Assembly (NCBI RefSeq): GCF_037042905.1
Contig: NC_087259.1
Coordinates: forward strand, 22,506,001 to 22,570,000
Length of the DNA: 64,000 nucleotides
Direction of reading: 5' to 3'
Origin: Lytechinus pictus
Taxonomy: Eukaryota
Both the position numbers and the translations under genes were made by a program. Positions within the stretch are counted from its first letter, which is position 1; every line of letters starts with the position of its first letter. Shown in pieces: positions 34,137-64,000 of this stretch. The notes beneath the pieces were generated by a model that was not told the DNA's origin, ran no database searches, and worked only from the letters and a program-made list of their open reading frames with translations.

Positions 34137-34207
34137 GGTGCTACATCAATGATAGATCAGCTGGAATCCATTCTTCTTCATCCATCTTAAAAAAGAACAA
34201 AAGAAAA

Positions 34208-43093: not shown

Positions 43094-44020
43094 TTTTTTG
43101 TCTCACCTGCATAGCAGAGTGAGACTATAGGCGCCGCTTTTCCGACGGCGGCGGCGGCGTCAACACCAAATCTTAACCTGAGGTTAAGTTTTTGAAATGA
43201 CAGCATAACTTAGAAAGTATATGGACCTAGTTCATGAAACTTGGCCATAAGGTTAATCAAGTATTACTGAACATCCTGCCTGAGTTTCATGTCACATGAC
43301 CAAGGTCAAAGGTCATTTAGGGTCAATGAACTTAGACCATGTTGGGGGAATCAACATTGAAATGTCATCATAACTTAGAAAATATATGGACCTAGTTCAT
43401 GAAACTTATACATAAGGTTAATCAAGTATCAATGAACATCCTGCTTGAGTTTCACATCACATGACCAAGGTCAAAGGTCATTTAGGGTCAATGAACTTTG
43501 GCCGAATTGGGGGTATCTGTTGAATTACCATCATAACTTTGAAAGTTTATGGATCTGATTCATGAAACTTGGACATAATAGTAATCAAGTATTACTGAAC
43601 ATCCTGTGCAAGTTTCAGGTCACATGATCAAGGTCAAAGGTCATTTAGGGTCAATGAACTTTGGCCAAATTGGGGTATTTGTTGAATTACAGCCATAAAT
43701 TTGAAAGTGTGTTGGTCTAGTTCATAAAACTTGGACATAATAGTAATCAAGTATCACTGAACATCCTGTGCAAGTTTCAGGTCACATGATCAAGGTCAAA
43801 GGTCATGTTAAGGTCAAAGAACTTTGGCCACGTTGGGGGTATTTGTTGAATTGCCATCATATCTCTATAAGTGTATTGGTCTAGTTCATAAAACGTGGAA
43901 ATAAGAGTAACCAAGTATCACTGAACATCTTGTGCGAGTTATAGTAGTTTTCAAAATCAGCACTGCTGCTATATTGAATCGCGTGATGCAGGTGAGACGG
44001 CCAGAGGCATTCCACTTGTT
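43094..44020 (+). mobile_element. HINE/DINE-like tandem-repeat element, opposite orientation to the other copies
   Basis: SubTIRs GTCTCACCTGCAT / ATGCAGGTGAGAC, 5' hairpin, (GGC)n, about 5 tandem units, T-rich flanks. Confidence 0.75.
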
Positions 44021-44218
44021 TAATGTTTTCTTTTCCTTTTCAATTAAGCCAAACTAAAATTTAGCAGAGTCTTATTCCCTTTTTTTTGTAGTAGATATCC
44101 TAAATCCCAAAAGAAATAAGCTGATGTTGTCACTATGCACAGTGCACACTAAGTCCAGTGTTATAACTTATATAGCCTGGTCTAGGTTTCAATTGTACCT
44201 TGTAACAAAACTGGATTA

Positions 44219-44685
44219 GAGTAAAGTGCCCAAATATCGGACACTTAGCATAATTGGACCAAAACAAAAATACAATCATTGAATCAAATAAAAATCATGT
44301 TTATTTCTGTAGTACAAATGTTGAATATTAACATAACAAAAATAGATTTGAAAAAAAATATGGTGAATGGAAATTATTAACTTACTAGACTGCCAGAAGC
44401 TTGTTTTTTGCCGAATATCGGACACAGTTTTAAAAATATCGAGCACGTAAAGATGTGCGCCGCGATCAATATCTGCGATTTCGATCGTGCTCTAAACCCC
44501 CAAATAATTGCTTGATTGATGAGAAATAACTTGTCAGCTGCGCAAATGCAGTTCAATAGAAAGTATGTTGAATATATCTCGTGCATTCAAGTCCCCTGCC
44601 AGTGCTGGTCCCTGTAGTTGTAGGGAGGGAGTTGAAGTCATTCTCGTCCGATATTCGGAACCGTCCAATGTTTGGGGGTTTACTC
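44219..44685. mobile_element. TA-flanked MITE
   Basis: GAGTAAA..CCCAAATATCGGAC / GTCCAATGTTTGGG..TTTACTC termini with TA flanks. Confidence 0.6.
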
Positions 44686-45049
44686 TATGCATTTGTTTCT
44701 TCAGTAATATCACACTTCAAGTATGATTTAGTGCCCTTTTTGAAAAGCTTGCAATTGTGGCAAGGTTTTTCTAACATGATAAAAAAAGTGTTATTTTGTA
44801 TACCAAATCTGCACAGTCCATTGTACCACGGTACAATTGAAGCCTCTTTTTGAGAAAAGAAGCCTAAAGGACTAATTCATTATTAGGTTTTATTAGAAAT
44901 GTGAAAAATTACCTTTGAATTTTGAAATAGTTTACTCTTCTTCATTGATTAAAATTCTTCTTGATTTGGGGAATGGATTATGCCTGATTTTTTTTTTCAC
45001 ATTTCTTACAAAGTGTCTAAAATTTTCTACTGCATTATTTCATGCGCAG

Positions 45050-48000
45050 GGGTTCGTGAAAGTTGTGAAGAACAAAGCGTACTTCAAGCGGTACCAGGTC
45101 AAGTTCAGGCGTCGCCGTGAAGGCAGGACCGACTACCAGGCTCGCCGCTTCTTAGTTGTACAAGACAAGAACAAGTACAACACCCCCAAGTATCGCATGA
45201 TTGTTCGCTTCACCAACAAGAATATCACATGTCAGGTACATGTAACATATTTTCAAAGTACTTCCCTGCAGGCAATTTTTTTTCAATTTATTTTCAGAGG
45301 CTACTTTTCACAACACATTGCCTAAATTTGCAATATCGGATAAGCTTTAAATAATGCAGTGAACGGGGAATTACATGGGCTCTTTTTTAGCATTTCGGGG
45401 ATGAAAGGGCCCTGGTGGGTGTTTCATAAAGCTGTTCGTAAGTTAAGAGCGACTTTAAGGACTGGTGATCCTTTCTTATGGTAAATGGTATATTCAATGG
45501 CGATGGTTTAGCGCGTAAGAAAGGATCACCAGTTGTTCTTAAAGTCGCTCTTTACTTACGAACAGCAAATTCCATAATAGGCGAACTATTTTTTTATAAT
45601 ATCATGGGAGCCGAATCAGATGATATGGGCCTATCTACTCAATATCATTTACCCATTGTTTCAATTCATATCTTACAGCTCTATCAGCCACTCTGCATTT
45701 TTATTTATTTTTGCTATGTTTGGCTTCAGTCAACTGATTGGAAGGAGCATTATAAGATTTTAGAATTAATACTTATAAAAATATACCCCATGATAAAATG
45801 CCATGAAAAAAGCTGGAATTACCATATGATTAACGGTGATTTTAGAATGGTAAGTGGATTTATACACTAAGAAGATCAAGCTCTTTCGATTTCTCTGCTT
45901 GACTGTTTTTATTTTATTTTTTGTTTTTGTTTTTACTCTTGTTACCTCTTTGTCTTTGGATCATACATTCATGACATAATATCCCTAAGTTCAAACTTGC
46001 AGTGATTTCATATATATGCAAGGAATAATTGTCCTGTCATCGCATCTCAATTTGCTCCACATTGATACATTTTTGTGTGTTTTGCATAGAAATTCCAGAA
46101 TTTTGTTGAGAGCTTTTTTCTTATGACTAAAAAACACTAACCAAGTTTGGTCAGTAAAATTCAATCCCTGTAATGAAGCTTCTCAGCAGCATTTTTTTAA
46201 AGGGTTTAGTTGGAAGTTGGTGAACCCTTAAAGCGGGTTTAAATTTATGATTGCTTTGTAGCTTGTGTCAAAAGTTAAACTTTTTGCTCTTTGCTGTTTC
46301 CATTACAGATAGCGTACGCCAAGTTGGAGGGAGACATCATTGTATGCGCTGCATACGCTCATGAACTCCCCCGCTATGGTGTCAAGGTCGGGCTGACCAA
46401 CTATGCTGCAGCGTACTGCACAGGACTGCTCCTGGCTCGCAGGGTAAGTAGCTGTTCTTTACCCCATCAGAAACATGACTAAGGCAATAAATAGCTACTT
46501 AAAAAGACTGTTATCGCTATTGGCTAAAATAGTTTTCTGTAAGCACCACATTTTACCTCTACAAAATCTGTGATCAAAACCTCTCCAGTTGTGTTAGATG
46601 CTTAAGCTGATTAAGCAAAAGTATGTGCAATTGATTTTGTCTACTATAATTGTATTGCATGATTGATCGATTACCATGCTAAAAACTTGCTGCATTCATC
46701 CACCCTTCCCCCCAAATGAATGTATTGATACAAGCTTTGGAAGGGGAGGGTTGCAATTTAATAGGATTTTTCATCAACTTATGTTAGTCTGTTGACTTCA
46801 AGGTTGTACCGTTTCACAAAATGATAATGAAAACCTACCCATTCTGAAACATTGTAGGAAATATTTTTACAGAATTGAGTCTGCCATGAATTGTATCTTG
46901 TTCCATTTGAACAGATTCTGAAGAAGTTCAACTTGGACAGTATCTACGAGGGTCAGACAGAGCCAGATGGTGATGACTACTTGGTAGAGTCAGAGGAGGG
47001 CAAGGCCGGTGCCTTCCGGTGCTTCTTGGACGTTGGTCTTGCCAGAACCAGCACTGGTGCCAAGGTGTTTGGAGCACTCAAAGGTGCCGTTGACGGCGGT
47101 CTGGAGATCCCTCACAGGTAAGGTATACATGAAGTCCATTCATTGACAGTTAACTTGGCAATTCATGCAGGTTAGTTTGCTCTCTTCCCTTAGTATGCTG
47201 GCCTTTTTCTGCTACAAATCTCATTTGCCAGCAAGGCAGGCAACGCTGAGGCAATTAAGAGGGAATGACCGAGGAAATTGATTGTCGCTTCTCGCAGGTC
47301 CTCTTGCTAATATTAGTAAAAATAAGGTCACAAGGCCACTCAAAAATTATTTTGAAAAAAAAGATCTCTTAACCCTAAAAGGCCTGGGGGGGGCAACATA
47401 ATTCAAGTGCATGTCAGACCCAAAACTACTCAAAAACATGAATTCATGTACAAATCCTATGCAAATTGTGTATTTAGCCAAAATTCATAAATGTATCATT
47501 ATTTCTACTTATACTAATTAAACTTAATTGATTTTCTCTTGTTTATGATTAGAATTAAGTCTGCAACACTTTCCATCGAAAAAACAGTAAAAAACAAAAA
47601 GTGGAAAACAAAGAAATAAATAAAAAAACTACAAAATTTATAAGAAAAAATTTGCGATGCCAATTTTTTTTTTAACATTTGATCGGGATCCTACAAAGAG
47701 TATGTGAATAAAATAATTAGCAGTTTGGGGGCCGTATGATAGTTGATTAGAGCACCCGGGGCTTGTAGATACTGGCCAACAATGAATGAATGAAATAATG
47801 GACTCGTTTATGACAGAAGTACACCCATTGATGAGATGCCAAAAAATAGCTGGAATTACCGTATGATAATTGCTGATTCAAGCTTGGCGGCTGAGGGTGA
47901 ATTAAAATATGATTGCTTTTTTGTCAAGGCTTCTGATGGAAAAAAGACTCTGGTTAACTAGCAAAAGTAATCCTTGCATAAGAGTAATATTTGCAGAAGT

Positions 48001-50569
48001 CAAGGCAATTTTATGACGAGATTATACAGTACATGTACACATTGCTATGGTCTCATAATATTGAACTGAGGCAAAGTTACTAATCGAAGATATTTGTGAA
48101 CAGCTTATGGATACACCGTACCAAGGTCTGCAGGGCCAAATACGAAACATCCAGGGGGGGGGGGGGTGTTTCACAAAGATTTTTTTTCTAAGTATGACTT
48201 TAGAGTCACACTTAAATGCCGATGCGAACATGATATGCAACACGCAATCTTATTGATCAATAAGCAGTAGTGCGCATCCTCATTGCATGATCTGACCAAT
48301 GTGGTCATGCCTTTTATACCGCACGCAACTAGACATTTAAGTGCGTCTCTAAGTCATACTTTTATCTTTGTGAAATGCCCTCCTGATGTGAAGTAGAGCA
48401 GAGAGAAACTGATCTCTATTGACAAATTCATCACCTTTATGTTTTCTCCTACATAGCAACAAGCGCTTCCCGGGATACGACTCGGAAAGTAGTGAGTTCA
48501 GTGCAGAGGTCCACAGGAAGTACATCTTTGGCGGTCATGTTGCTGATTACATGAAAGAACTTCAAGAAGAAGATGACGAGGCTTACAAACGTCAGTTCTC
48601 CCAGTTCATCAAAAATGACATCACACCAGATTCAGTAAGTTCTTTACCCATCAACGTCTATGCTTTATACATCCAGGGCCCTATTGCAGACATAGGGCAG
48701 ACATACAGTGGTGCTCAAAACTTAGTGAACTCCGCCAGAAAATGAACATATTTGAATTGTTCAAGTTCTGCCATGTTTTAGATGTTTAATTGTAAAGTAA
48801 GGTGATAAAATATCACATTCAGTAAAGTTTGTTTCTCTGGGCTTGCCAAACATTGTAGTGTTGTCTACATTCAACACTGCATGAAGGAGTGCATTTTGTG
48901 GTTGGTTTCACTTTTGAGTACAACTGTAGGTTTTTTAAATAACCGTAGTCTTTGGAAGTAGGTCTTGAAGATTGGCTGCTTACTTTTTGAGAAAAAAAAA
49001 TGATGGATTGAATTGAGAAAGAAGTTGTGGAGGAGTTGGCCAATAGGAGGGATGTAGTCAGGTTCGACCTCAAGGCCAATTCTTGCAAGCCTCTGCCTGA
49101 GTCACATGTACAAAATCTATGTGGAAAGGTTTACTCCATCGGCCTTGTGGCTAAAAAAATAACACTACATCTCTGGCTAATAGTCAATCCCTTGGTTTAT
49201 GAATTTTGTGATCAAACTTCAAAGTAGTGCCATCAGTGACTCCATTAGGATATTTCTTTCCAACACTTCTTTGTGATTTGTCTGATGCACACTTCTGCTT
49301 GAAAGGATGCTAGTAGGGACAAAGTTTCAAGTTTTGTTTTTTATCCTGTGAATGTCACTTTCAAAGTGATGAAGATGTGACCCCCACTTGATGAAATCCA
49401 CCCTGTGATGATATGCCAATATATAGCTGGAATTACCGTATGAACTATACTGATTCAACCTTGGCAGCTGAGGGTACTAAGGATGTAACTCTAGTTATGC
49501 TTCAGATAAAATTGGCTGTCCCTGTTCTTAAGAATAAACCTTTTCAAATGTTAGCACTATTATTGACATGTTCATTTAACCGGTATTTTCTTTTTGGCCA
49601 AAAATGTTACAATTGGAATTATCTGTTGTGAAATTGGCAAACAAAAGCATATACGATGTTTATAGCTTGTACAGATTTATATGAAATGTATAATTGTAAT
49701 GAGCCCTTTGTTACTGTATAGATGAATATAAAGGATGTCAATTCCATGGCGATAGACCGCAATATGCATGTATTTAACTTTTTTTTCTTCAGATTGTGAA
49801 TTGTATCCTATGACTTTTACTTTCAGCTTGAAGCTATGTACAAGAAGGCCCACGATGACATCAGGGCCGATCCTGAGGCCAAGTCAAAGAAGGATTTTGC
49901 TGGAAAGACCAAAAGGTGAGCTTTAATTAGACTAAAAGGAAACCAGGGCATAAGGTGTGGAAGGGAAAGAAGGTACAGTCAAATCTCTTGAAGTTGCCTT
50001 TATTGCTCTTATGTGTGTTATCCACCTTGTGATGAGATGCCAAAAAATAGCTGGAATTACCGTATGATATTTACTGATTCAAGCTTGGCGGCTGAGGGTG
50101 TTTGTTCATCGAGAGTGATTCTTATAATTTTTTTAAGAATCTATGAAAATTTTATATTGTAGTAAAAATACAGTGTTTACCAGGTTAAATAAATTGAGCT
50201 GGGATACACATTTTCTCCCATCATCTTGATGGAAATGCTTTCATGAATTGATAAAATGTACATTTTAATATTAGAAGTAAGGAGTAATATGTTGAGATAC
50301 AAGTGCATGTAACATTTAATATGTGTATTTAACTAGATAACCTACATCAAAATACATGTTATTGTAAAAAGCTGGAACCAGAATATTACCACGTTGTATT
50401 GCAGCTTGGAGTCTTGGACTATATTTCTTGTCATGATAATTTATTTTTATCATAATTCTGAATTTGTTGCTTCAGATGGAACCGTGCCAAGCTCACCCTG
50501 GCCCAACGCAGGGACCGTGTCCGGCAGAAGAAAGCATCCTTCCTTTACGCCAACCAGTCTCACGACTAA
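45050..50569 (+). CDS. RPL5: 60S ribosomal protein L5 (uL18), exons 2-7, about 295 aa with the exon-1 Met
   Basis: Exons 45050-45235 ([29 protein letters not shown]), 46309-46443 ([23 protein letters not shown]), 46915-47117 (..[30 protein letters not shown]), 48457-48634 (KRFPGYD..HVADYM), 49827-49915 and 50476-50569 ([22 protein letters not shown]..stop). Canonical splice sites and consistent phases. AATAAA at 50634 and 50796. Confidence 0.97.
45785..45860 (+). pseudogene. Decayed SNORD65-like snoRNA copy (RPL5 intron 2)
   Basis: Retains the guide AGCTGGAATTACC and D' ATGA, but box C is ATGATAA and box D and the terminal stem are lost. Confidence 0.7.
47822..47899 (+). ncRNA. SNORD65: Box C/D snoRNA, SNORD65/snR77-like (RPL5 intron 4)
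   Basis: Terminal stem CACCC/GGGTG, box C TTGATGA, 14-nt guide AGCTGGAATTACCG antisense to conserved 18S CGGUAAUUCCAGCU, D' ATGA, box D CTGA. The D'+5 rule selects the U equivalent to yeast Um578 and human Um627. Confidence 0.9.
49400..49475 (+). ncRNA. SNORD65: Box C/D snoRNA, SNORD65/snR77-like (RPL5 intron 5)
   Basis: Stem ACCC/GGGT, box C GTGATGA, same 18S guide with D' ATGA, box D CTGA, internal TGCCAA/TTGGCA stem. Confidence 0.9.
50023..50100 (+). ncRNA. SNORD65: Box C/D snoRNA, SNORD65/snR77-like (RPL5 intron 6)
   Basis: Stem CACCT/GGGTG, box C GTGATGA, same guide, D' ATGA, box D CTGA. Confidence 0.9.
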
Positions 50570-50979
50570 GTCATCAACTCCTCATCGTCCTCCTCCTCCT
50601 CACATCATCCAATATCAAGTACTTCAATTCCGGAATAAACAATGAACATGAACTTCACTTGCAATACTCCTCATAGACAGTATCACCTGGGGCTCGTAGA
50701 TACTGGCCAACAATGAATGAATGAATGAAATAATGGACTCGTTTGCGACAGAAGTGATAACATCGGCAACTGGCATTGGGCCGGTATAAAGTGGCTAATA
50801 AAATATTGATGACATGTATTTAAAACCGTGTGTGTTGTGTTTTTATTTCGTATTGGTAGAAATGTTTGAATATGTGTCAATGCAGAGAATGTGATCATGA
50901 TCAAGGCAAAGCACTGTGATTCGTTCAAAAAGTATGTGGTTGCAAAATTACGTACCATTATGTTAATGCATGTCAGACC

Positions 50980-51157
50980 CAGGGGTGTGAGAGTTCAGAT
51001 TTTTATCTGATTTCAGATTTTTTTTTTTTTCAGCTTAATTTCAGCTTATATTTGGCCTTCCTCTGTACAAAAAGTATGGGAGCTCTTTCTATTTCAGCCT
51101 TTTTCAACACTCTTCAGCTTTTTCAGATCTTTATATTCGTGACCACTCACACCCCTG
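50980..51157. mobile_element. Small hAT MITE (also at 56981-57160), nested in a piggyBac-like fragment
   Basis: TIRs CAGGGGTGTGAG / CTCACACCCCTG and an 8-bp TSD GTCAGACC; present in both duplication units. Confidence 0.85.
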
Positions 51158-51647
51158 GTCAGACCCCAAATTGCTCTAAAACATGAATTAATGTACAAAA
51201 CCTGTTTCTCTGCATACCAATTTTATTATTTTTTTTTTTACCAGCTTTTGTCCTTCCACATAATTTTATTTTATGGAAAGTTTTGATGGTTTGAAGGGAT
51301 GAGACGGTGCTTAACCTTTACCTCAACTTTGTTAAAGGTACTTTAGTTTGGATCTCTGGGATTGGGAATTTTCCAAGGGTAGTGTAGAAAATTGGGTTTG
51401 ACCTGGACAATATTTTAGCATTCAGAAGGCAAATTCATAATAGGCAAACTGTTTTTTTATAATATCATGGGAGCCGAATCAGATGATATGGGCCTATCTA
51501 CTCAATATCATTTACCCATTGTTTCAATTTATATCTTACAGCTCTATCAGCCACTCTGCATTTTTATTTGTTTTTGCTATGTTTGGCTTCAGTCAACTGA
51601 TTGGAAGGAGCAATATAAGATTTTAGAATTGATACTTTTAAAAATAT

Positions 51648-51722
51648 ACCCCATGATAAAATGCCATGAAAAAAGCTGGAATTACCATATCATTAACGGT
51701 GATTTTAGAATGGTAAGTGGAT
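51648..51722 (+). pseudogene. Decayed SNORD65-like copy (duplicate of the intron 2 copy)
   Basis: Guide retained; D' further mutated from ATGA to ATCA; no box D. Confidence 0.7.
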
Positions 51723-52159
51723 TTATACACTAAAAAAATCAAGCTCTTTGATTTCTCTGCTTGACTGTTTTTATTTCTTTTGTTTTTACTCTTGTTTCCT
51801 CTTTGTCTTTGGATCATACATTCATGACATAATATCCCTAAGTTCAGACTTGCAGTGATTTCATATAAATGCAAGGAATAATTTTCCTGTCATCGCATCT
51901 CAATTTGCTCCACATTGATACATTTTTGTGTGTTTTGCATAGAATTCCAGAATTTTGTTGAGAGCTTTTTTCTTATGACTAAAATATACTAACCAAGTTT
52001 GGTCAGTAAAATTCAATCCCTGTAATGAAGCTTCTCAGCAGCATTTTTTAAAGGGTTTAGGTGGAAGTTGGTGAACCCTTAAAGCGGGTTTAAATTTATG
52101 ATTGCCTTGTAGCTTGTGGCAAAAGTTTAACTTTTCGCTCTTTGCTCTTTCCATTACAG

Positions 52160-55100
52160 ATAGCGTACGCCAAGTTGGAGGGAGACATCATTGTATGCGC
52201 TGCATACGCTCATGAACTCCCCCGCTATGGTGTCAAGGTCGGGCTGACCAACTATGCTGCAGCGTACTGCACAGGACTGCTCCTGGCTCGCAGGGTAAGT
52301 AGCTGTTCTTTACCCCATCGGAAACATGACCAAGGCAATAAATAGCTACTTAAAAAGACTGTTATCGCTATTGGCTAAAATAGTTCTCTGTAAGCACCAC
52401 ATTTGACCTCTACAAAATCTGTGATCAAATCCTCTCCAGTTGTGTTAGATGCTTAAGCTGATTAAACAAAAGTATGTGCAATTGATTTTTTTCTACTATC
52501 ATTGTATTGCATGATTGTTCGATTACCATGCTAAAAACTTGCTGCATTCATTCACCCTTCCCCCCAAATGAATGTATTGATACAAGCTTTGGAAGGGGAG
52601 GGTTGCAATTTACAGGATTTTTCATCAACTTATGTTAGTCTGTTGACTTAAAGGTTGTACCGTTTCACAAAATGATATTGAAAACCTACCCATTCTGAAA
52701 CATTGTATGAAATATTTTTACAGAATTGAGTCTGCCATGAATTGTATCTTGTTCCATTTGAACAGATTCTGAAGAAGTTCAACTTGGACAGTATCTATGA
52801 GGGTCAGACAGAGCCAGATGGTGACGACTACTTGGTAGAGTCAGAGGAGGGCAAGGCCGGTGCCTTCCGGTGCTTCTTGGACGTTGGTCTTGCCAGAACC
52901 AGCACTGGTGCCAAGGTGTTTGGAGCACTCAAAGGTGCCGTTGACGGCGGTCTGGAGATCCCTCACAGGTAAGGTATACATGAAGTCCATTCATTGACAG
53001 TTAACTTGGCAATTCATGAAGGTGAGTTTGCTCTCTTCCCTTAGTATGCTGGCCTTTTTCTGCTTCAAATCTCATTTGCCAGCAAGGCAGGCAACGCTGA
53101 GGCAATTAAGAGGGAATGACCGAGGAAATTGAGAGTCACTTCTCGCAGGTCCTCTTGTTAATATTAGTACAAATAAGGTCACAAGGCCACTCAAAAATTA
53201 TTTTGAAAAAAAAGATCTCTTAACCCTATAAAAGGCCTTGGGGGGGCGGAATCCCCCCTCCCCCTCTACATTTTTCGCGATAAATCCGCCGGCGAAATTT
53301 TTAACTGCGTCTCTCACTGACTTTCAAATCTCGCACAACTTTTGAGACCAAATTTGCAATGCCCAGGTACGCAGTCACAAAATTATGCAACATAATGCAA
53401 GTGCATGTCAGACCCAAAACTGCTCAAAAACATGAATTCATGTACAAATCCTATGCAAATTGTGTATTTAGCCAAAATTCATAAATGTATCATTATTTCT
53501 ACTTTTACTGATTAAACTAAATTAATTTTCTCTTGTTTATGATTAGAATTAAGTCTGCAACACTTTCCATCGAAAAAACAGTAAAAAACAAAAAGTGGAA
53601 AACAAAGAAATACATAAATTAAAAAACAATAAAATTTATAAGAAAAAATTTGTAATGCCAAATTTTTTTTTAAACATTTGATCGGGATCCTACAAAGAGT
53701 ATGTGAATAAAATAATTAGCAGTTTGGGGGCCGTATGATAGTTGATTAGAGCACCCGGGGCTCGTAGATACTGGCCAACAATGAATGAATGAAATAATGG
53801 ACTCGTTTATGACAGAAGTACACCCATTGATGAGATGCCAAAAAATAGCTGGAATTACCGTATGATAATTGCTGATTCAAGCTTGGCGGCTGAGGGTGAA
53901 TTAAAATATGATTGCTTTTTTGTCAAGGCTTCTGATGGAAAAAAGACTCTTGTTAACTAGCAAAAGTAATCCTTGCATAAGAGTAATATTTGCAGAAGTC
54001 AAGGCAATTTTATGACAAGATTATACAGTACATGTACACATTGCTATGGTCTCATAATATTGAAGTGAGGCAAAGTTACTAATCGAAGATATTTGTGAAC
54101 AGCTTATGGATACACCGTACCAAGGTCTGCATTGCCAAATACGGAACATCCAGGGGGGGGGGGTGTTTCACAAAGATTTTTTTTTCTAAGTATGACTTTA
54201 GAGTCAAACTTAAATGCCGACGCGAACATGATATGCAACACGCAATCTTATTGATCAATAAGCAGTAGTGCGCATCCTCATTGCATGATCTGACCAATGT
54301 GGTCATGCCTTTTATACCGCACGCAACTAGACATTTAAGTGCATCTCTAAGTCATACTTTTATCTTTGTGAAATGCCCTCCTGATGTGAAGTAGAGCAGA
54401 GAGAAACTGATCTCTATTGACAAATTCATCACCTTTGTGTTTTCTCCTACATAGCAACAAGCGCTTCCCGGGATACGACTCGGAAAGTAGTGAGTTCAGT
54501 GCAGAGGTCCACAGGAAGTACATCTTTGGCGGTCACGTTGCTGACTACATGAAAGAACTTCAAGAAGAAGATGACGAGGCTTACAAACGTCAGTTCTCCC
54601 AGTTCATCAAAAATGACATCACACCAGATTCAGTAAGTTCTTTACCCATCAACGTCTATGCTTTATACATCCAGGGCCCTATTGCAGACATAGGGCAGAC
54701 AAAAAGTGGTGCTCAAAATTTAGTGAACTCCACCAGAAAATGAACATATTTAAATTGTTCAAGTTCTGCCATGTTTTAGATGTTTAATTGTAAAGTAAGG
54801 TGATAAAATATCACATTCAGTAAAGTTTGTTTCTCTGGGCTTGCCAAACTACATGTCTACATTCAACACTGCATGAAGGAGTACATTTTGTGGTTGGATT
54901 CACTTTTGAGTACAACTGTATTTTTTTTAAAATAACCTTGGTCTTTGGAAGTAGGTCTTGAAGATTGGCTGCTTACTTTTTGAAAAAAAAAATGATGGAT
55001 TGAATTGAGAAAGAAGTTGTGGAGGAGTTGGCCAATAGGAGGGATGTAGTCAGGTTCGACCTCGAGGCCAATTCTTGCCAGCCTCTGCCTGAGTCACATG

Positions 55101-56568
55101 TACAAAATCTATGTGGAAAAGTTTACTCCATCGGCCTTGTGGCTAAAAAATAACACTATAGCCTCGACTACATCTCTGGCTAATAGTCAATCCCTTGGTT
55201 TTTGTGATCAAACTTCAAAGTAGTGCCATCAGTGACTCCATTAGGATATTTCTTTCCAAGACTTCTTTGTGATTTGTCTGATGCACACTTCTGCTCGAAA
55301 GGATGCTAGTAGGGACAAAGTTTCAAGTTTTGTTTTTTATCCTGTGAATGTCACTCTCAAAGTGATGAAGATGTGACCCCCACTTGATGAAATCCACCCT
55401 GTGATGATATGCCAATATATAGCTGGAATTACCGTATGAACTATACTGATTCAACCTTGGCAGCTGAGGGTACTAAGGATGTAACTCTAGTTATGCTTCA
55501 GATAAATTTGGCTGTCCCTGTTCTGAATGAATAAACCTTTTCAAATGTTAGCACTATTATTGACATGTTCATTTAACCGGTATTTTCTTTTTGGCCAAAA
55601 ATGTTACAATTGGAATTATCTGCATGTGAAATTGGCAAACGAAAGCATATTCGATGTTTATAGCTTGTACAGATTTATATGAAATGTATAATTGTAATGA
55701 GCCCTTTGTTACTGTATAGATGAATATAAAGGATGTCAATTCCATGGCGATAGACCGCAATATGCATGTATTTAACATAGGTTATTTTCAGATTGTGAAT
55801 TGTATCCTATGACTTTTACTTTCAGCTTGAAGCTATGTACAAGAAGGCCCACGATGACATCAGGGCCGATCCTGAGGCCAAGTCAAAGAAGGATTTTGCT
55901 GGAAAGACCAAAAGGTGAGCTTTAATTAGACTAAAAGGAAACCAGGGCATAAGGTGTGGAAGGGAAAGAAGCTACAGTCAAATCTCTTCAAGATTCCTTT
56001 ATTGCTCTTATGTGTGTTATCCACCTTGTGATGAGATGCCAAAAAATAGCTGGAATTACCGTATGATATTTACTGATTCAAGCTTGGCGGCTGAAGGTGT
56101 TTGTTCATCGAGAGCGATTCTTATAATTTTTGTAAGAATCAATGAAAAATTTATATTGTAGTAAAAATACAGTGTTTAACAGGTTGAATAATTTGAGCTG
56201 GGATACTCATTTTCTCCCATCATCTTGATGGAAATGCTTTCATGAATTGATAAAATGTACATTTTAATATTAGAAGTAAGGAGTAATTTGTTGAGATACA
56301 AGTGCATGTAACATTTAATATGTGTATTTAACTAGATAACCTACATCAAAATACATGTTATTGTAAAAAGCTGGAACCAGAATATTACCATGTTGTATTG
56401 CAGCTTGGAGTCTCCGACTATATTTGTTGTCATGATAATTTATTTTTATCATAATTCTGAATTTGTTGCTTCAGATGGAACCGTGCCAAGCTCACCCTGG
56501 CCCAACGCAGGGACCGTGTCCGGCAGAAGAAAGCATCCTTCCTTTACGCCAACCAGTCTCACGACTAA
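52160..56568 (+). CDS. RPL5: Second, 5'-truncated copy of RPL5 (exons 3-7 only); tandem duplicate or uncollapsed allele
   Basis: Exons 52160-52294, 52766-52968, 54455-54632, 55826-55914 and 56475-56568 have intact splice sites. The only exon differences I saw are synonymous (TAC/TAT, GAT/GAC, CAT/CAC, GAT/GAC). No exon 1 or exon 2 lies between the two copies. Confidence 0.8.
53821..53898 (+). ncRNA. SNORD65: Box C/D snoRNA, SNORD65/snR77-like (duplicate of the intron 4 copy)
   Basis: Same boxes, guide and stem as 47822-47899. Confidence 0.85.
55396..55471 (+). ncRNA. SNORD65: Box C/D snoRNA, SNORD65/snR77-like (duplicate of the intron 5 copy)
   Basis: Same boxes, guide and stem as 49400-49475. 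Confidence 0.85.
56022..56099 (+). ncRNA. SNORD65: Box C/D snoRNA, SNORD65/snR77-like (duplicate of the intron 6 copy)
   Basis: As 50023-50100, but the terminal stem here is the fully Watson-Crick CACCT/AGGTG. Confidence 0.85.
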
Positions 56569-59500
56569 GTCATCAACTCCTCATCGTCGTCCTCCTCCTC
56601 ACATCATCCAATATCAAGTACTTCAATTCCGGAATAAACAATGAACATGAACTTCACATGCAATACTCCTCATAGACAATATCACCTGGGGCTCGTAGAT
56701 ACTGGCCAACAATGAATGAATGAATGAAATAATGGACTCGTTTGCGACAGAAGTGATAACATCGGCAACTGGCTTTGGGCCGGTATAAAGTGGCTAATAA
56801 AATATTGATGACATGTATTTAAAACCGTGTGTGTTGTGTTTTTATTTCGTATTGGTAGAAATGTTTGAATATGTGTCAATGCAGAGAATGTGATCATGAT
56901 CAAGGCAAAGCACTGTGTGATTCGTTCAAAAAGTATGTGGTTGCAAAATTACGTACCATTATGTAAATGCATGTCAGACCCAGGGGTGTGAGAGTTCAGA
57001 TTTCTATCTGATTTCAGATTTTTTTTTTTTTTCAGCTTAATTTCAGCTTATATTTGGCCTTCCTTTGTACAAAAAGTATGGGAGCTTTTTCTATTCCAGA
57101 CTTTTTCAACACTCTTCAGCTTTTTTCAGATCGTTTTATTTGTGACCACTCACACCCCTGGTCAGACCCCAAATTGCTCTAAAACATGAATTGATGTACA
57201 AAACCTATGCAAAAGTATCTAGCCAAAATTCTTACATGTATTATTATTTCTACTTTTACTGATTAAAGGTCATGTCCACCTCAGAAAAATGTTGATTTGA
57301 ATCAATAGAGAAAATTCAAACCAGCATAATGGTGAAAATTTCATCAAAATCGGATGTAAAATAAGAAAGTTATGACAATTTTAAGTTTCGCTTATTTTTC
57401 ACAAAATAGTTATATGCACAATTTTTGTCACATGGAAATGAGATGGTCAATGTCCCTCACTATTTTTTTGTTTTTTATTGTTTGAATTACACTATATTCA
57501 ATTTTTTACAGATTTGTCAATAAGGACCAACTTATTCACATCAACTTTGTGTTGGGGTGGACTTGTCCTTCATGGCTGATCGGGATCTTAAATTAAAAAT
57601 TAGCTGTTTAGGGCTGTATTTCGTTAAAAGGATTTCTTTATTTTACGTACAATAGGAAAAATTAAACTGCAGCCTTGTAGATTTCATCACACACTACCTC
57701 TGTGCAAATTTTATTGGTGCTTGCGTTATCAGTGACCGAGATGTTGGGGGGGGGGGCAGAAGCTCTTGCCCCAACATTGCATGACTATCATGCAGGTACA
57801 AAAATAATGAACAAAAAAAATGTGTAAGACACAAAAGAAAAGTTATTGAAATGTGGCATGAGCTCATTACCACAAAAAATGGTTTTAGGGGGATTAAGAT
57901 TATTTTAAAATTTCCTCAAAATTGAGACGCAGTGGACGTCAACAAGGCCAAAATTTATCATCACTCCACACTTATGACAAAACTAAATGCAACATGAAAG
58001 ATGTACATTTGAAATTTCTTTATTGTATTCTTCATATATTCATCTGATATTTATAAACAAGTGGTGGGTGTTTCATAAAGCCATTTGTAAGAAACGAATG
58101 ACTGCACTGACTGGTGACCTTTTCTTGTGCTAAATATATAACCCTATGTAGCCGAAATGGCACTAAGAACATACCCCAGTCTTGTATAAAGTCATGCACA
58201 ACTTAACAGCTTTATGAAATGCCTACCAGGAGCATTTACACACATTTACATTTGCTACTGAACATTACAAAACATTACATATGGAAATGAAGTAAAGGCT
58301 ACTATTTGAATATCAGGATATGAAAGCAAGAAAAGCAATTATACTAGTGATTTTAATTTAAGCCCCAAAAGAACAAAGATAATATTTTACTGAGAAGTAC
58401 AAAGAGTCAACTCAAGCAATTTAAATTTGGGTTTTGAGTTTATTGTAGTTTTGATTTGAACATCAAGATAGAGAAATGAAATGGATGTCATTCTTTGGTA
58501 TGGTTGACTGTATTCTGCAGCAAATATTTACATAAGTTAGCTTTTCTTCTTTCGACTCTGCATTACTTCTTTCTCACAAACACATTTCGATGTGAAATAA
58601 TTTCTCTGTGTTGCACAGATTGAAATCTTTTAAACCCAACATTTTTCTTTCTCCTGCACGAGCAACAATAAGTCTACTGGCACTGATCATACCTTCACCT
58701 CGTTTTCAATCATGAAAATGCAAGGTGCATATACCTACAGTTTATTACTATATCACCTATGGCGGGGGGGGGGGGCAGCATGCACATGAATTTTTGGATG
58801 AGTGAATTGTGCTCTGCCAACATTTTGCTTTTGAAAACAGTTTTTCTTTAAAAAGATGGCTAATTATTACCCTGTTTTCAAGTTACAAATGGTGGATTAT
58901 AAAGTAAGCTACGAATGGTAAGATACAAAACTACTGCTATATAATGCAATTGGATAAATCTTACTAAGGCAGGTCGAATCTCTTGGAACAGAATTTTGTT
59001 AGACTTGAGTAAAATTCAACTTTGAAATGGAAATATAATATAAATAAATATATATTTTAATAGGCAATCATTGGACTCAATGATGAACATCTATGCAAAA
59101 TTTTTCATTCATCCTGCAAAGAGATTGGCCAAGAGAAATTAAGAAATGTACATTTCATGTGTTTGCAATTTATATATTTTTCAAACACAGACCAGATATC
59201 CAAACATCAACTGCAATTTAGGCAACTATCTATAGGTACCTTTGCCTGAATCAAATTCATTGGGACCACTAAAATATGTTCGACCTAGGGAGAAATCTGA
59301 CTTTAAGGTCTACATTATGTTTGAATAATCTGTACTGACTGCACAGAAACGTTGTTAACGCATTGTGTGCTAACAGGGGCCCTGTTACAACCGGTAATGT
59401 GGCAGTGATGCCTAATGTTACAATACATTACTTACATTGAAATAAATGTTTTGACTTCATAATCTAAAAGATGTGTCTGGGCTTACTGATAGCGCTCTGT

Positions 59501-59740
59501 TAGGTTAACAATGTTTCTGTGCAGCCGGCACAGGTCTATACAAAATGATTTGACTTGAGAAAATATTTGACTTTACCGATATCCCTAAAAGATTCTTAAA
59601 CATTGGCTAGCAAATCCATGTACAAGCATACTTTGTATGTGAAACATGAGTTGTGATATTCATTTAGCAACTGCAAAGGAATTAACCAACCAACTTTGTA
59701 AGATGGAAATCATCATTCCGAGTTATCAAATTCTTCCAAA

Positions 59741-60097
59741 AACAAGTGGAGCGCCTCTGGCAGTCTCGCCTGCATTACGCGATTCAATATTGCCGCAGTG
59801 CTGACTTTGAAAATGACTATCAAATAATCATTCACAAAAACACAATTCATATAATAATATACTACGTTCATTGACCGTAAGAGACATTTGACCTTGATCA
59901 TGTGATCTGAAACTCAGGCATGATGTTCAGTAATACTTGGTAACCCTTAAGTCCAAGTTTCATGAACTAGATCCATATACTTCATAAGTTATGATTTCAA
60001 AAACTTAACCTTAGGTTAAGATTTGATGTTGACGCTAATGCCGCTGTCGGAAAAGCAGCAGCTATAGTCACGCACTGCTATGCAGGCGAGACAAAAA
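59741..60097 (-). mobile_element. Short HINE/DINE-like element with a single internal unit
   Basis: Same termini as the 24279 family. Confidence 0.7.
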
Positions 60098-61702
60098 TTA
60101 ATGAAGAATATCTTGTCTATCAATATCAAATTTTTAAAAATCATGCATTTTTTTATTCAATCGAGTTGTATTAGTTGTAATAGTATAATTTTTTAAAATA
60201 TATTTTATAAAATGCCTTGCTTCATGCATTGTCTTTAATCAACTACAATCCATAATGTGAACTTCCCATGAGGGTTTTGAACAAGATGGTCATATTTGCA
60301 ACAATATTACATTCTTCAACACAGACTGATTAAATGTATTCCTCCATTTTTCCAAAATTTTCCAATCATGGGACTGTCATATTTATCAGAGAGGTTTAAT
60401 TGCAATAACAAAATGTTTCAATGTACTGCTTCATACAATGTATGTTGTGCATTTCTCAACATCAATCATCATTAAATTGAGACTCATGATACTTTGTACA
60501 AAGTTGGTTAAACATACGGTTTATACATTATGTATTATTACATTATCTCCATCAACCAGAATATAAATAACAAGGAAGCATAATATGAAGGCAATTAATA
60601 CTTGTCTGCATTTAAAATAAAATATCAACATGAAAAACAAAATTAGAGGACATTCATATAAGACTTAAGGCATATGCTATTGTTATTCTTTAATCAATGT
60701 ATGTAATGTATTCTTTACACTAATTGTCTCTCCTTGTCCTAATTACTTTCTCAACATTATTAGAATTCAAGTGACTACCATACACCAATGATTTATGCTT
60801 TTCAGAGAAATAAAAAATAAAAAAACAAGAAATTCAAAGAAGATATACCAGAAAAATACTCATTAATTATCTCCTCTGATACACCACATTTATATCAAAG
60901 AAGACAGTTGAGAAAGTGTTTTCTTTAAGCAGTCACCATTAATTTCACTCAAGTCATGAGTAAGTCAAATAAATGGGACTTAACAATTAGTTTTGAAAAG
61001 AAAAAGACTAATACAAAGTGTACAGTTTATACAATATCAATCATTAAGTGGTGTTGTAAGTTACGATTATTAAGTACCTCAAAGGTGTGATCCGCCTTTG
61101 ACTGTACTTCTTTACCAGGTATCTTGCTCAGAGACTTGATCCATTTCAATCACAGCCCCAGCCCCCCCCCCCCCTTCAATGGGGAAGGAACAATGCGCGA
61201 TTCAGCAAAATAAACATTACATCTTAATAAAAAATTGTGAATCTAATGAAAAACCATGTCATGGACATAGAACTATCAAATATAATATTTCCTGATAGAG
61301 TGTCTTTTCCCAAATAATTTGATAAAAGCTTGGATATTCTTTGCTGTGATTAAAAAATTGACTTGTGTAACTGCAATGAGTGATTCAAATGTCCCTAAAG
61401 TCAAAATCCAACACAAGTTCAGAAAATTTCCATGCGAAATACCTATTTAATTAGATCAACGTAGGCTCATGATTGACAACAAATAGTGTTTAATGGCCAG
61501 GTTTTGTAAAATAACTTATTGAGAAGGTATTTCGCTATGAATTTTACTGCAATTCATGTAGGAATATGCCTTCATCGACATCTGGATTCATTCACTGCAC
61601 TTATGCCTTTCATTGGCACAATATTTACAATACTCATTATGATCAAGTTTTTTTCATTGAAATGACAATATTTGAGGCCTGTGCATATGCCGCATATCCA
61701 TC

Positions 61703-62737
61703 AACAAGTGGAACGCCTCTGGCAGTCTCGCCTGCATTACGCGATTTAATATAGCAGCAGTGCTAACTTTGAAAACTACTATAAAATAATCGTTCACAAA
61801 AACACCATTCATATAATGACTTAATACCACGTTCATTGACCATAAATGACATTTGAACGGTGACTAAAGACTTGTCAACTACACCCATGTCCACATTTCA
61901 TTCACTGTCTCCATAAACTTTCAAAGTTATGATGGCAATTCAACAATTACCCCAACATGGCCTAAGTTTATTGACCTTAACTGACCTTTGACCTTGGTTT
62001 TGTGACCTGAAACTCACAGGGGATGTTCAGTGATACTTGATTACTCTTATATCCCAAGTTTTATGAACTAGATCCATAAACTTTCAGAGTTAGGATGGTA
62101 ATTTAACAAATACCCCCAACACAGCCAAAGTTCATTGACTTTAAATGACCATTGAGCATGGTCATGTGACCTGAAACTCTCACAGGATATTCAGTGGTAC
62201 TTGATTAACCTAATGTCTAAGTTTCATGAACTAGATCCGTAAATTTTCAAAGTTATGATAGTAATTCAACAAATACCCCCAACTTGACCAAAGTTCATTG
62301 ACCCTAAATGACCTTTGACCTTGGTCACGTGACCTGAAACTCAAGCAGGATGTTTACTAATACTTGATTAACCTTATGCCCAAGTTTCATGAACTACGTC
62401 CATATACTTTCTAAGTTATGTCATTTCAAAAACTTAACCTTTGGTTAAGATTTTGAAAATAATTCTCCTAACATGGTCTAAGTTCATTGACCCTAAATGA
62501 CCTTTGACCTTGGTCATGTGACCTGAAACTCAGGCAGGATATTAAGTAATACTTTATTAACCTTATGTTCAAGTTTCATGAACTAGGTCCATATACTTTT
62601 TAAGTTATGATGTAATTTCAAAAACTTAACCTTAGGTTAAGATTTGATGTTGACGCCGCCGCTGCCGCCGCCACCGCCGTCGCCGTCGGAAAAAGCGGCG
62701 CCTATAGTTTCGCTCTGCTATGCAGGCGAGACAAAAA
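61703..62737 (-). mobile_element. HINE/DINE-like tandem-repeat element
   Basis: Same termini, about 5-6 internal units, and (GCC)n near one end. Confidence 0.75.
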
Positions 62738-64000
62738 CCACTGGACACGACTTTGGTGAAAATACCATCATACGCACAGGCTCTTCCTTCACATTTACAG
62801 AGCCACAGAATTCAAACAAGACTAATATTCACAACATTACTGGCACAAATTATTGCTTTGTATAATGCAATGGCTGTGCTAATCTATTAGAACCCCTTGA
62901 TACCAACCAGTATATTGTATGAATATTGCACTGGAAAGTTACTTGCCCTGAAACCAGATGCAAATCATACTCACTATATCAAAAATGAAATATGCAGGGA
63001 GTATATTGCATGCCAAAATTTTACAAGAAAATGGGGGGGGGGGGGTATTTGTTAGAAGAATAAGGTTGTTACATTCAAGATGAAAATTTACCGGGTTTCT
63101 CCTACATGTACAACACGGCACACTGGAAATGTACTGCATTGCAAAAGAGTGCAATCTTGCATCGCAACAATACTGGTACTTTTCGAGAATATGGCAACAG
63201 TGGCATTTTTATATTGATTGCAAGAATATTTTTACATCATAGCAATAAAAAGTAAAATTTTCCAGAACATATATTTCCTCTGAGCTTTGCAATGGATTCT
63301 GAAATAACATTTCAATATATACAATGATTTTGAATGTGAAACAGGCGATTGCACATTGATCTTAATATAACCTATTAAATTTGATTGATAAACTTCATGT
63401 ACGGACCACCATCTTACAGCAGAGAAAAAAAGGATATTTGTAAACTTATTTGTCATTTGGGACCCCCACTTCAATGGCCATTCATGATTTCTCAATTGTA
63501 AAGACTGTCGCACACCTTATGATTGGTCTGCCACCCATTTCGGAATGGAAATGTAGTAAGACGTGATGTGAAAATTGAAACATGGAACATATCACTGTGT
63601 AAGGTTCTAAATCATTGTATGAATATTGATGTTCATATCTGCAACTACTCTTCCATCCTTTTATTAATAAAAGCGAAATGGTTACCTATTAGTCATTCAT
63701 TAAATTGGCTACAATTTTGCATCATCCAAAATTTTTATTATTCTTACAGTTCATGTGAACCTCTTATAAAAAAGATACTTGTTCAGTTCCAGAAAATAAG
63801 CAAAAAGCGATTTGTTCAAAAATCAGATTGAGGACCAGTCGTAAGGTGTGCGGAGGTCTTGAGGCATCTACATGCATCTTGACTTCTTTATCCATTAAGC
63901 ATCTATCAACGCATCATCAGTGAGCAGCAAACTACTCATTGGAAAATTGGCATGATAGCAGTCATTGGTCATCTATCTAGCGATGTCTATCAATAGGCAT

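What the first reader, a model, noticed from the sequence alone, without database searches (positions are those of the whole stretch)
45785..56099. RPL5 introns host an amplified array of one snoRNA (SNORD65/snR77-like) aimed at the 18S decoding loop
Seen: the same ~77-nt box C/D cassette with guide AGCTGGAATTACC(G) sits once each in introns 2, 4, 5 and 6 of RPL5, and again in the duplicated unit, giving 8 copies of which 6 are intact. Known: this guide pairs with 18S helix 18 (530 loop) CGGUAAUUCCAGCU, and the D'+5 base is the U next to the decoding G (yeast Um578 by snR77, human Um627 by SNORD65). Human RPL5 hosts SNORD21 and SNORA66 instead, and human SNORD65 lies in a non-coding host gene. 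Inference: this lineage moved the snoRNA to a new host and then duplicated it intron-to-intron, so each RPL5 pre-mRNA releases three functional guides for one small-subunit site and ties decoding-loop methylation to 5S-RNP protein expression.
Basis: partly seen in the sequence, partly recalled or inferred. Interest (0 to 1): 0.8.

Follow-up and report, generated by a model that had tools for sequence, protein, structure and literature searches.

The report
SNORD65-like snoRNA copies in RPL5 introns
An expressed ribosomal protein L5 gene carries, in three separate introns, three well-kept copies of a small guide RNA predicted to direct methylation of one conserved U in the 18S decoding loop; this is a normal snoRNA arrangement seen here in a new host gene, not a new kind of system.

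Summary
The 13-mer AGCTGGAATTACC occurs eight times, all on the + strand and all in RPL5 introns. Six copies sit in complete ~79-nt box C/D cassettes. The two intron-2 copies have lost box C and box D.

The guide pairs over 15 positions with this genome's own 18S. It places the fifth base upstream of D' on U585, the equivalent of human Um627 (SNORD65) and yeast Um578 (snR77).

Rfam gives no hit at its gathering scores. The best sub-threshold hits are full-length SNORD65 and snoR77Y matches (30-34 bits, E about 0.001-0.005).

RNA-seq splice junctions confirm that the cassettes are intronic, sense-strand and one per intron. Mature snoRNAs were not seen, but these libraries would not capture them.

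Cassette identity between introns is 85-92%, while the flanks are at random level. Between the two 6-kb units the cassettes are as conserved as the exons.

The second unit is a 5'-truncated copy of the gene (exons 3-7). A contig from another data set bridges its junction, so it is probably real, but a haplotype artefact is not excluded.

A seventh intact paralogue lies in an intron of a FUS/EWS/TAF15-like gene on another contig. The direction of the "host switch" therefore cannot be told.

Verdict: a new member of a known kind, of modest interest.

The parts
45050..45235 (+). RPL5 exon '2', the first coding exon found (GFVKVVKNK...). It is not duplicated.
   Evidence: Pfam PF17144 positions 1-50, E 6.6e-24. 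AG acceptor and GT donor read in the sequence.
45784..45862 (+). Decayed cassette in intron 2, unit A. The guide is intact and D' ATGA is kept, but box C reads ATGATAA and there is no box D.
   Evidence: SNORD65 24.9 bits, E 0.12. Model R1 27 bits.
46309..46443 (+). RPL5 exon 3 (unit A)
   Evidence: The junction was seen in RNA on the identical unit-B exon.
46915..47117 (+). RPL5 exon 4 (unit A)
   Evidence: RNA reads carry the unit-A letters at both differing sites.
47821..47899 (+). Intact box C/D cassette in intron 4, unit A: box C 47829-47834, guide 47848-47861, D' 47863-47866, box D 47891-47894.
   Evidence: SNORD65 33.2 bits, E 0.001, model positions 1-73 of 73.
48457..48634 (+). RPL5 exon 5 (unit A)
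49398..49476 (+). Intact box C/D cassette in intron 5, unit A: box C 49406-49411, guide 49425-49438, D' 49440-49443, box D 49468-49471.
   Evidence: snoR77Y 34.1 bits, E 0.0026, full length.
49827..49915 (+). RPL5 exon 6 (unit A)
   Evidence: Pfam PF14204 positions 1-25..
50022..50100 (+). Intact box C/D cassette in intron 6, unit A: box C 50030-50035, guide 50049-50062, D' 50064-50067, box D 50092-50095.
   Evidence: SNORD65 30.6 bits, E 0.0046.
50476..50569 (+). RPL5 last exon with the stop codon (unit A). AATAAA signals at 50634 and 50797.
45565..51203 (+). Duplicated unit A: from inside intron 2 to about 630 nt past the stop codon.
   Evidence: blastn of the window against itself, 96.5-96.7% identity.
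51204..51428 (.). 225-nt spacer between the two units. It occurs nowhere else in the genome.
   Evidence: Bridged by a 615-nt contig of run X1 covering 51139-51749.
51429..57206 (+). Duplicated unit B. It holds exons 3-7 (52160-52294, 52766-52968, 54455-54632, 55826-55914, 56475-56568) and lacks exons 1-2.
   Evidence: The exons differ from unit A at 4 of 699 sites, all synonymous.
51647..51725 (+). Decayed cassette in intron 2, unit B. Its D' is also changed, to ATCA.
   Evidence: SNORD65 23.4 bits, E 0.28.
53820..53898 (+). Intact cassette in intron 4, unit B, identical to the unit-A copy.
55394..55472 (+). Intact cassette in intron 5, unit B, identical to the unit-A copy.
56021..56099 (+). 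Intact cassette in intron 6, unit B. It has one change from unit A, G to A just after box D, which turns a G-U pair of the terminal stem into A-U.

Best explanation
The intact cassettes are intron-encoded box C/D snoRNA genes of the SNORD65 / snR77 / snoR77Y lineage.

Proposed mechanism. Steps 1 and 5 are shown; steps 2-4 are inferred.
1. RPL5 is transcribed and spliced.
2. Each excised intron 4, 5 and 6 is debranched and trimmed back to the box C/D core, which is protected by the terminal 5-bp stem and the core proteins. This yields one RNA of about 75-80 nt per intron.
3. The element upstream of D' pairs with 18S 581-595.
4. Fibrillarin then 2'-O-methylates U585, the residue 3' of the decoding G (human Um627, yeast Um578).
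5. The stretch upstream of box D is not a second guide. It varies between copies, and its GCCA/UGGC pairing with the stretch after box C looks structural.

The three paralogues arose by old intron-to-intron duplication and are kept by selection. The intron-2 copy is a dead relic. A later duplication copied the gene from intron 2 to the 3' flank, doubling the count in the assembly. One more paralogue sits in a FET-family gene intron.
For: - The guide is present as eight exact copies, far beyond chance.
- The canonical box order is intact in six copies.
- The terminal stem is kept through changes on both sides: CACCC/GGGTG, CACCT/AGGTG and TTCCC/GGGAA. Three of five stem pairs show compensatory change.
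- The guide forms 15 contiguous pairs (14 Watson-Crick) with the genome's own 18S, with U585 opposite the fifth base upstream of D'. The target sequence is present in at least 51 rDNA repeats.
- The best Rfam hits are SNORD65 and snoR77Y, full length, E 0.001-0.005. That clan guides Um627/Um578/Um580 (PMC3511168, PMC11550049).
- Stranded RNA reads splice exons 3-4, 4-5, 5-6 and 6-7 at GT..AG on the + strand. The cassettes are therefore intronic, in sense orientation and one per intron.
- Paralogue identity is 85-92% inside the 79-nt block and at shuffle level (0.51-0.61) in 100-nt flanks.
- Between units A and B the substitution rates are: cassettes 1/234, exons 4/699, introns 117/3969. That gives P 0.007 for the cassettes and 8e-6 for the exons.
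- Genome-wide there are only seven combinations of box C plus guide.
Against: - No hit reaches Rfam's gathering score: 30.6-34.1 bits against 41 for SNORD65 and 52 for snoR77Y.
- No mature snoRNA signal appears in two ribo-depleted RNA runs. Only about 6% of each run was read, and standard libraries lose 75-nt RNAs. Logan contigs that hold the cassette come from runs of unknown kind.
- D' is AUGA, not CUGA.
- The cassettes lie 350-557 nt from the 3' splice site. From my own knowledge, this is much further than the roughly 70-80 nt reported as optimal in vertebrates.
- Near-identity between copies could partly reflect gene conversion rather than selection on each copy.
- Methylation of U585 is untested.
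Confidence: 0.8

Rival explanations
1. The second unit (51429-57206) is an assembly artefact, with two haplotypes of a single-copy gene laid in tandem. The true count would then be four cassettes, three of them intact, at this locus.
For: - A-B divergence (about 3% substitutions plus indels) equals the difference between the assembly and a contig from another data set (14 mismatches and 8 gap letters in 611 nt).
- Exons and cassettes are conserved exactly as alleles would be.
- At the exonic A/B sites, other samples carry mosaics: X21/X22 read A-type, A-type, B-type, and X1 reads A-type, B-type, A-type. These sites therefore behave as segregating polymorphisms.
- X1 depth over the duplicated introns is no higher than over the unique spacer.
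Against: - A 615-nt contig from run X1, differing about 3.6% from the assembly, runs from the unit-A 3' flank (51139) through the spacer into unit B (51749).
- The spacer is unique in the genome, so it is not the rest of a repeat that could mislead an assembler.
- The breakpoint at 51203 lies inside a repeat copy that continues past 57206 in unit B. That fits a real rearrangement.
- There are no Ns in the window.
Confidence: 0.3
2. Only one or some of the copies yield a stable, working snoRNA. The rest are redundant passengers kept similar by recent duplication or gene conversion, so 'three functional guides per pre-mRNA' overstates the case.
For: - The intron-2 copy shows that copies here do decay.
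- The intron-4 and intron-6 cassettes are nearly identical from box C onward, 2 differences in 71 nt, which fits conversion.
- All copies lie far from the 3' splice site.
- Many snoRNA family copies in animal genomes are not detectably expressed (PMC13736004, PMC8178906).
- No expression data exist per copy.
Against: - All three keep the boxes, the stem (with compensatory changes) and the guide, while their flanks are randomised.
- The cassettes are as conserved as exons between units A and B.
- The intron-5 copy has 10-12 private differences, yet none falls in a box or in the guide.
Confidence: 0.3
3. The cassettes are not snoRNAs. They would be chance or rDNA-derived antisense fragments carried by a repeat.
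For: - The intron-2 fragment with its flanks was copied to contig C5 between two copies of a common repeat.
- The 5' flank of the intron-4 cassette belongs to a dispersed repeat.
Against: - The intact cassettes occur only seven times in 812 Mb.
- Homology stops at the terminal stems.
- Box order, spacing and the D'+5 geometry all fit a methylation guide.
- The best Rfam hits are the expected family.
Confidence: 0.02

Closest known systems
Human SNORD65 (HBII-135, Rfam RF00571)
   Same: It is a box C/D snoRNA with the same antisense core (AGCUGGAAUUACCG) upstream of D' and the same D'+5 geometry, guiding 18S Um627 (PMC11550049, PMC3511168). The cassettes here align to it over its full length.
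   Different: - Scores fall below Rfam's gathering cut-off.
- D' is AUGA here and CAGA in the family consensus.
- The 3' half is not conserved.
- The human gene is a single copy at the non-coding SNHG29 locus (PMC9622897). Here there are three intact copies in a protein-coding ribosomal-protein host, plus one in a FET gene.
Yeast snR77 (RF01181) and plant snoR77Y (RF01178), Rfam clan CL00057
   Same: They guide the equivalent U, Um578 in yeast and Um580 in Arabidopsis. The lineage is traced to the last eukaryotic common ancestor (PMC3511168). The intron-5 copy scores best against snoR77Y.
   Different: The genomic organisation differs. From my own knowledge, yeast snR77 is part of the polycistronic snR72-78 cluster. 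Here the copies are intronic.
Multi-copy snoRNA paralogues in different introns of one ribosomal-protein gene (own knowledge: human SNORD18A/B/C in RPL4, SNORD36A/B/C in RPL7A, SNORD58A/B/C in RPL17)
   Same: Several copies of one guide sit one per intron, in sense orientation, in a highly expressed ribosomal-protein host. They arose by duplication within the gene.
   Different: The family and host pairing differs. Here a partial tandem duplication of the host gene also doubles the set.
Human RPL5 as a snoRNA host (SNORD21, SNORA66)
   Same: The host gene is the same. SNORD21 and SNORA66 lie within the RPL5 span in human (PMC4143550).
   Different: No SNORD21 or SNORA66 match was found in this RPL5, even at E up to 10. 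The payload has been replaced, which fits the known turnover of host associations (PMC3511168, PMC13736004).

Membership tests
Box C/D snoRNA (methylation guide) | Box C (RUGAUGA) near the 5' end and box D (CUGA) near the 3' end, brought together by a short terminal stem. | tested here: met
   Six cassettes in the window and the C2 copy have TGATGA, CTGA and a 4-5 bp stem with compensatory changes. The two intron-2 copies fail: ATGATAA and no CTGA.
Box C/D snoRNA (methylation guide) | An antisense element of at least 10 nt directly upstream of D or D', pairing with a stable RNA. | tested here: met
   15 contiguous pairs (14 Watson-Crick) with the genome's own 18S 581-595, ending one base before D'.
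Box C/D snoRNA (methylation guide) | A stable RNA of about 70-90 nt that accumulates and is bound by fibrillarin, Nop56, Nop58 and Snu13. | tested here: inconclusive
   No read pile at the cassettes in two ribo-depleted RNA runs. Only about 6% of each run was read, and the libraries are not suited to 75-nt RNAs. Protein binding is not testable with these tools.
SNORD65 / snR77 / snoR77Y (Rfam clan CL00057) | It guides the U 3' of the decoding G in the 18S 530 loop (human Um627, yeast Um578, Arabidopsis Um580), through the fifth base upstream of D'. | tested here: met
   ACCGU followed by AUGA puts the A opposite U585 of CGGUAAUUCCAGCU in the genome's own 18S. Family targets are from PMC3511168 and PMC11550049. 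This is a prediction from geometry; the methylation itself was not measured.
SNORD65 / snR77 / snoR77Y (Rfam clan CL00057) | A covariance-model score at or above Rfam's gathering cut-off. | tested here: inconclusive
   There is no hit at gathering scores. The best matches are full length, 30.6-34.1 bits against cut-offs of 41 and 52, with E 0.001-0.005 after correction for all 4227 families. No other family scores better.
Intron-encoded snoRNA of a ribosomal-protein host | Lies in an intron, on the sense strand, one per intron, in a transcribed and spliced host. | tested here: met
   GT..AG junctions from stranded RNA reads for introns 3-6. The exon model and Pfam matches support the host. Each of introns 4, 5 and 6 holds one intact cassette.

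The most novel reading that the evidence does not exclude
The 5'-truncated second unit is real and is transcribed, either by read-through or by splicing from exon 2 across unit A. It would then serve mainly to deliver three more guides. That would be a ribosomal-protein gene fragment caught turning into a snoRNA host, with its exons still held by splicing or conversion constraints.
Probability: 0.1. Interest if true: 0.5.

Novelty: new member of a known kind. Interest (0 to 1): 0.25.

Why it matters
- It adds an unannotated orthologue of an ancient guide for a decoding-centre methylation. The orthologue falls below Rfam's cut-off.
- It shows one more case of host-gene turnover and duplication within a gene. 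Both are already well documented (PMC3511168, PMC13736004).
- It gives copy-specific sequences and a covariance model for testing dosage and redundancy of a single conserved rRNA methylation.
- The partial host-gene duplication could be a small case study of how snoRNA host genes arise.
- Nothing here changes how snoRNAs are thought to work.

Tried and rejected
- **Rfam at gathering scores over the whole window:** no hits.
- **SNORD21 or SNORA66 in this RPL5:** none, even at E up to 10.
- **A second guide upstream of box D:** the element differs between copies. The best rRNA match is 13 pairs with four G-U pairs on 28S, including one at the target position, and only for the intron-4 and intron-6 copies. 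Rejected as a guide.
- **Another snoRNA in intron 3** (weak SNORD31/SNORD60 hits at 46813-46883, E 1-2): the boxes are degenerate. Rejected.
- **Relatives in metagenome contigs:** 68 exact 18-mer matches, but only one weak hit to model R1 (18 bits, no box D). Nothing usable.
- **Mature snoRNA reads in RNA runs:** none, uninformative. An RNA-run search with the 75-nt cassette found only one holder, of unknown kind.
- **Retroposition of the mature RNA as the copying mechanism:** there are no A-tails after the cassettes.
- **A false assembly join through a repeat:** the spacer is unique in the genome.
- **Exon 1 with the ATG:** not located. The only two ATG|GT sites upstream lack a convincing promoter context.
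- **Direct family search for 18S in the genome:** failed twice. It was replaced by a pattern search plus Rfam on a fetched rDNA unit.
- **Organism:** names are coded and were not determined.
Full report

Yes. AGCTGGAATTACC occurs eight times as an exact match, all on the + strand, at 45811, 47848, 49425, 50049, 51674, 53847, 55421 and 56048. Shuffles allowing up to two mismatches averaged 1.5 matches and never reached eight.

Aligning the eight copies with their flanks shows six complete cassettes of about 79 nt. Each has this order:
- a 4-5 bp terminal stem
- box C TGATGA
- a conserved ATGCC
- the guide AGCTGGAATTACCG
- one base, then D' ATGA
- a short loop, then C' TGATTC
- a variable stretch ending in TGGC
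- box D CTGA
- the closing half of the stem

The two intron-2 copies keep the guide but read ATGATAA in place of box C and have no box D. The unit-B copy has also lost D', which now reads ATCA.

**2. The host gene**

The window is G000:C15:22506001-22570000. Pfam Ribosomal_L5e and Ribosomal_L18_c match exon by exon, and only at this locus in the 812-Mb genome.

The exon model is:

| Exon | Unit A | Unit B |
|---|---|---|
| 2 | 45050-45235 | absent |
| 3 | 46309-46443 | 52160-52294 |
| 4 | 46915-47117 | 52766-52968 |
| 5 | 48457-48634 | 54455-54632 |
| 6 | 49827-49915 | 55826-55914 |
| 7 (with stop) | 50476-50569 | 56475-56568 |

Stranded ribo-depleted RNA reads from two runs of the same species give GT..AG junctions for exons 3-4, 4-5, 5-6 and 6-7. 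Exon depth is 30-85 for a + strand RNA.

The cassettes are therefore intronic, in sense orientation and one per intron: introns 2 (dead copy), 4, 5 and 6.

**3. What the cassettes are**

A fetched rDNA unit of this genome was delimited with Rfam into 18S, 5.8S and 28S.

The guide forms 15 contiguous pairs (14 Watson-Crick plus one G-U) with 18S 581-595. The base five positions upstream of D' lies opposite U585, the U of CGGUAAUUCC that follows the decoding G.

This site is guided by SNORD65 in human (Um627), snR77 in yeast (Um578) and snoR77Y in Arabidopsis (Um580). All three belong to one Rfam clan, traced to the last eukaryotic common ancestor (PMC3511168; Um627-SNORD65 also in PMC11550049).

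Rfam gives nothing at gathering scores. With E-value reporting over 13 kb, the six intact cassettes are full-length matches to SNORD65 or snoR77Y. They score 30.6-34.1 bits with E 0.001-0.005, and no other family comes close. The dead copies score 23-25 bits.

The stretch before box D varies between copies and has no convincing rRNA target. Its UGGC pairs with the GCCA after box C in every copy, so I read it as structural. That makes this a single-guide snoRNA.

**4. Evidence for constraint**

- The intron-4, intron-5 and intron-6 cassettes are 85-92% identical to each other. Their 100-nt flanks are at the level of shuffled sequence, 0.51-0.61 against 0.53-0.56.
- There are no A-tails that would point to recent retroposition.
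- The terminal stem is kept through compensatory changes: CACCC/GGGTG, CACCT/AGGTG and TTCCC/GGGAA.
- Between the two 6-kb units, substitution rates are 2.95% in introns (117/3969), 0.57% in exons (4/699, all synonymous, P 8e-6) and 0.43% in the three intact cassettes (1/234, P 0.007). The single cassette change converts a G-U stem pair to A-U. The dead intron-2 copy does not differ from the intron rate (1/73).

Together these argue that the cassettes are functional units. Gene conversion could contribute to the similarity.

**5. Expression**

The host is clearly expressed and spliced. No pile of reads marks the cassettes. However, only about 6% of each run was read, and standard libraries lose 75-nt RNAs, so this says nothing either way.

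Contigs of runs of unknown kind hold the intron-4 cassette with its flanks. That is intron or DNA sequence, not mature RNA. Production of the mature snoRNAs and methylation of U585 remain inferred.

**6. The duplicated unit**

Unit A (45565-51203) and unit B (51429-57206) are 96.5-96.7% identical and separated by a 225-nt spacer. Unit B starts inside intron 2, so it lacks exons 1-2 and the promoter.

*For a real duplication:*
- A 615-nt contig of run X1, about 3.6% different from the assembly, runs from 51139 in the unit-A 3' flank through the spacer to 51749 in unit B.
- The spacer occurs nowhere else in the genome.
- The breakpoint lies inside a repeat copy that continues in unit B.

*For a haplotype artefact:*
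- A-B divergence equals the polymorphism seen against X1.
- Exonic A/B differences appear as mosaics in other samples: X21/X22 read A, A, B and X1 reads A, B, A.
- X1 depth is not doubled over the unit.

In the 3' UTR, three linked A/B sites are mixed in both RNA runs, with 33-51% A-type letters. That fits either two expressed copies or a heterozygote.

I put the duplication at about 70% real. If it is an artefact, the locus has four cassettes, three of them intact.

**7. Copies elsewhere**

A pattern search, a covariance model built from the intact copies, and a box C plus guide pattern all find exactly seven intact cassettes in the genome. Six are here and one is at C2:21207749-21207828.

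The C2 copy has its own compensated stem, a 13-nt guide and a shorter loop. It lies on the sense strand, downstream of a 31-nt SYGQ-type micro-exon flanked by AG and GTAAGT.

Its host gene also shows:
- SYGQ-rich exons
- an RRM and a RanBP-type zinc finger
- RGG repeats and a C-terminal RRDRPY

This is a FUS/EWSR1/TAF15-like (FET) gene.

Because a non-RPL5 paralogue exists and no outgroup genome could be searched, the direction of the host change is open. Host turnover of conserved snoRNAs is the rule rather than the exception (PMC3511168, PMC13736004).

**8. Comparison and verdict**

It works like SNORD65/snR77, and I regard it as the orthologous guide for the same site. Rfam's operational cut-off is not reached.

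Human SNORD65 lies at the SNHG29 locus (PMC9622897). Human RPL5 spans SNORD21 and SNORA66 (PMC4143550), neither of which is detectable here.

Several paralogues of one guide in different introns of one ribosomal-protein gene is a familiar layout. First-stage notes on this same genome, which I did not check, report similar multi-copy intronic snoRNAs in RPS4, POLR1C and RBM26/27.

The finding is real and correctly identified but ordinary in kind. It is a new member of a known family in a new host, with a partial host-gene duplication as the only unusual extra.

Noticed in passing
G000:C2:21207749-21207828 (L012:1474-1548; L019:4752-4826): A seventh intact SNORD65-like cassette lies in an intron of a FET-family (FUS/EWSR1/TAF15-like) gene, on the sense strand. 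It has a compensated terminal stem (TTCCC/GGGAA) and a shorter D'-C' loop.
   Followed up: yes
G000:C5:21944456-21944538 (L035:1417-1633): A 218-nt copy (97%) of the dead intron-2 cassette with its flanks (window 45698-45915) sits between two copies of a ~927-nt repeat. One of these is 99.2% identical to the copy just upstream of RPL5 (window 43357-44020). The junctions show 2-4 nt of microhomology. This looks like a recent repeat-associated transfer of a piece of the RPL5 locus.
   Followed up: partly
window 43095-44021; also about 24400-25050, 34200-35100, 59740-60100 and 61700-62740 (reverse): An abundant ~0.9-kb element with internal tandem units starts with ACCTGCATAGCAGAGTGAGAC. Another copy starts 32 nt downstream of the C2 cassette. 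It is probably just a common repeat, but it sits next to snoRNA-related sequence at three loci.
   Followed up: partly
window 47753-47820 against 50684-50755 and 56683-56754: The 70 nt directly upstream of the intron-4 cassette recur (89%) in the RPL5 3' UTR or flank. The homology stops exactly at the cassette's first base. Read depth suggests a moderately repeated element.
   Followed up: partly
window 45849-45855 (and the same place in unit B): The dead intron-2 cassette reads GGTAAGT, a perfect 5' splice-site-like heptamer, at the position where box D lies in the intact copies.
   Followed up: no
window 56589, 56658, 56678-56679, 56774 (3' UTR, unit-B coordinates): RNA reads of two runs are mixed at three linked sites, 33-51% unit-A letters. 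About half of the reads also carry a 1-nt deletion present in neither assembled unit. This means two expressed alleles or two expressed copies.
   Followed up: partly
window 50900-51160, 53300-53700, 54100-54500, 54700-54900: Repeat segments in the 3' flank and in introns 4 and 5 have very high contig depth, and RNA reads map to them on both strands. These are transcribed dispersed repeats.
   Followed up: no
window 44520-45049: Exon 1 of RPL5, which should end in ATG, could not be found within 4 kb upstream of exon 2. There is no convincing ATG|GT with a pyrimidine-tract start site.
   Followed up: partly
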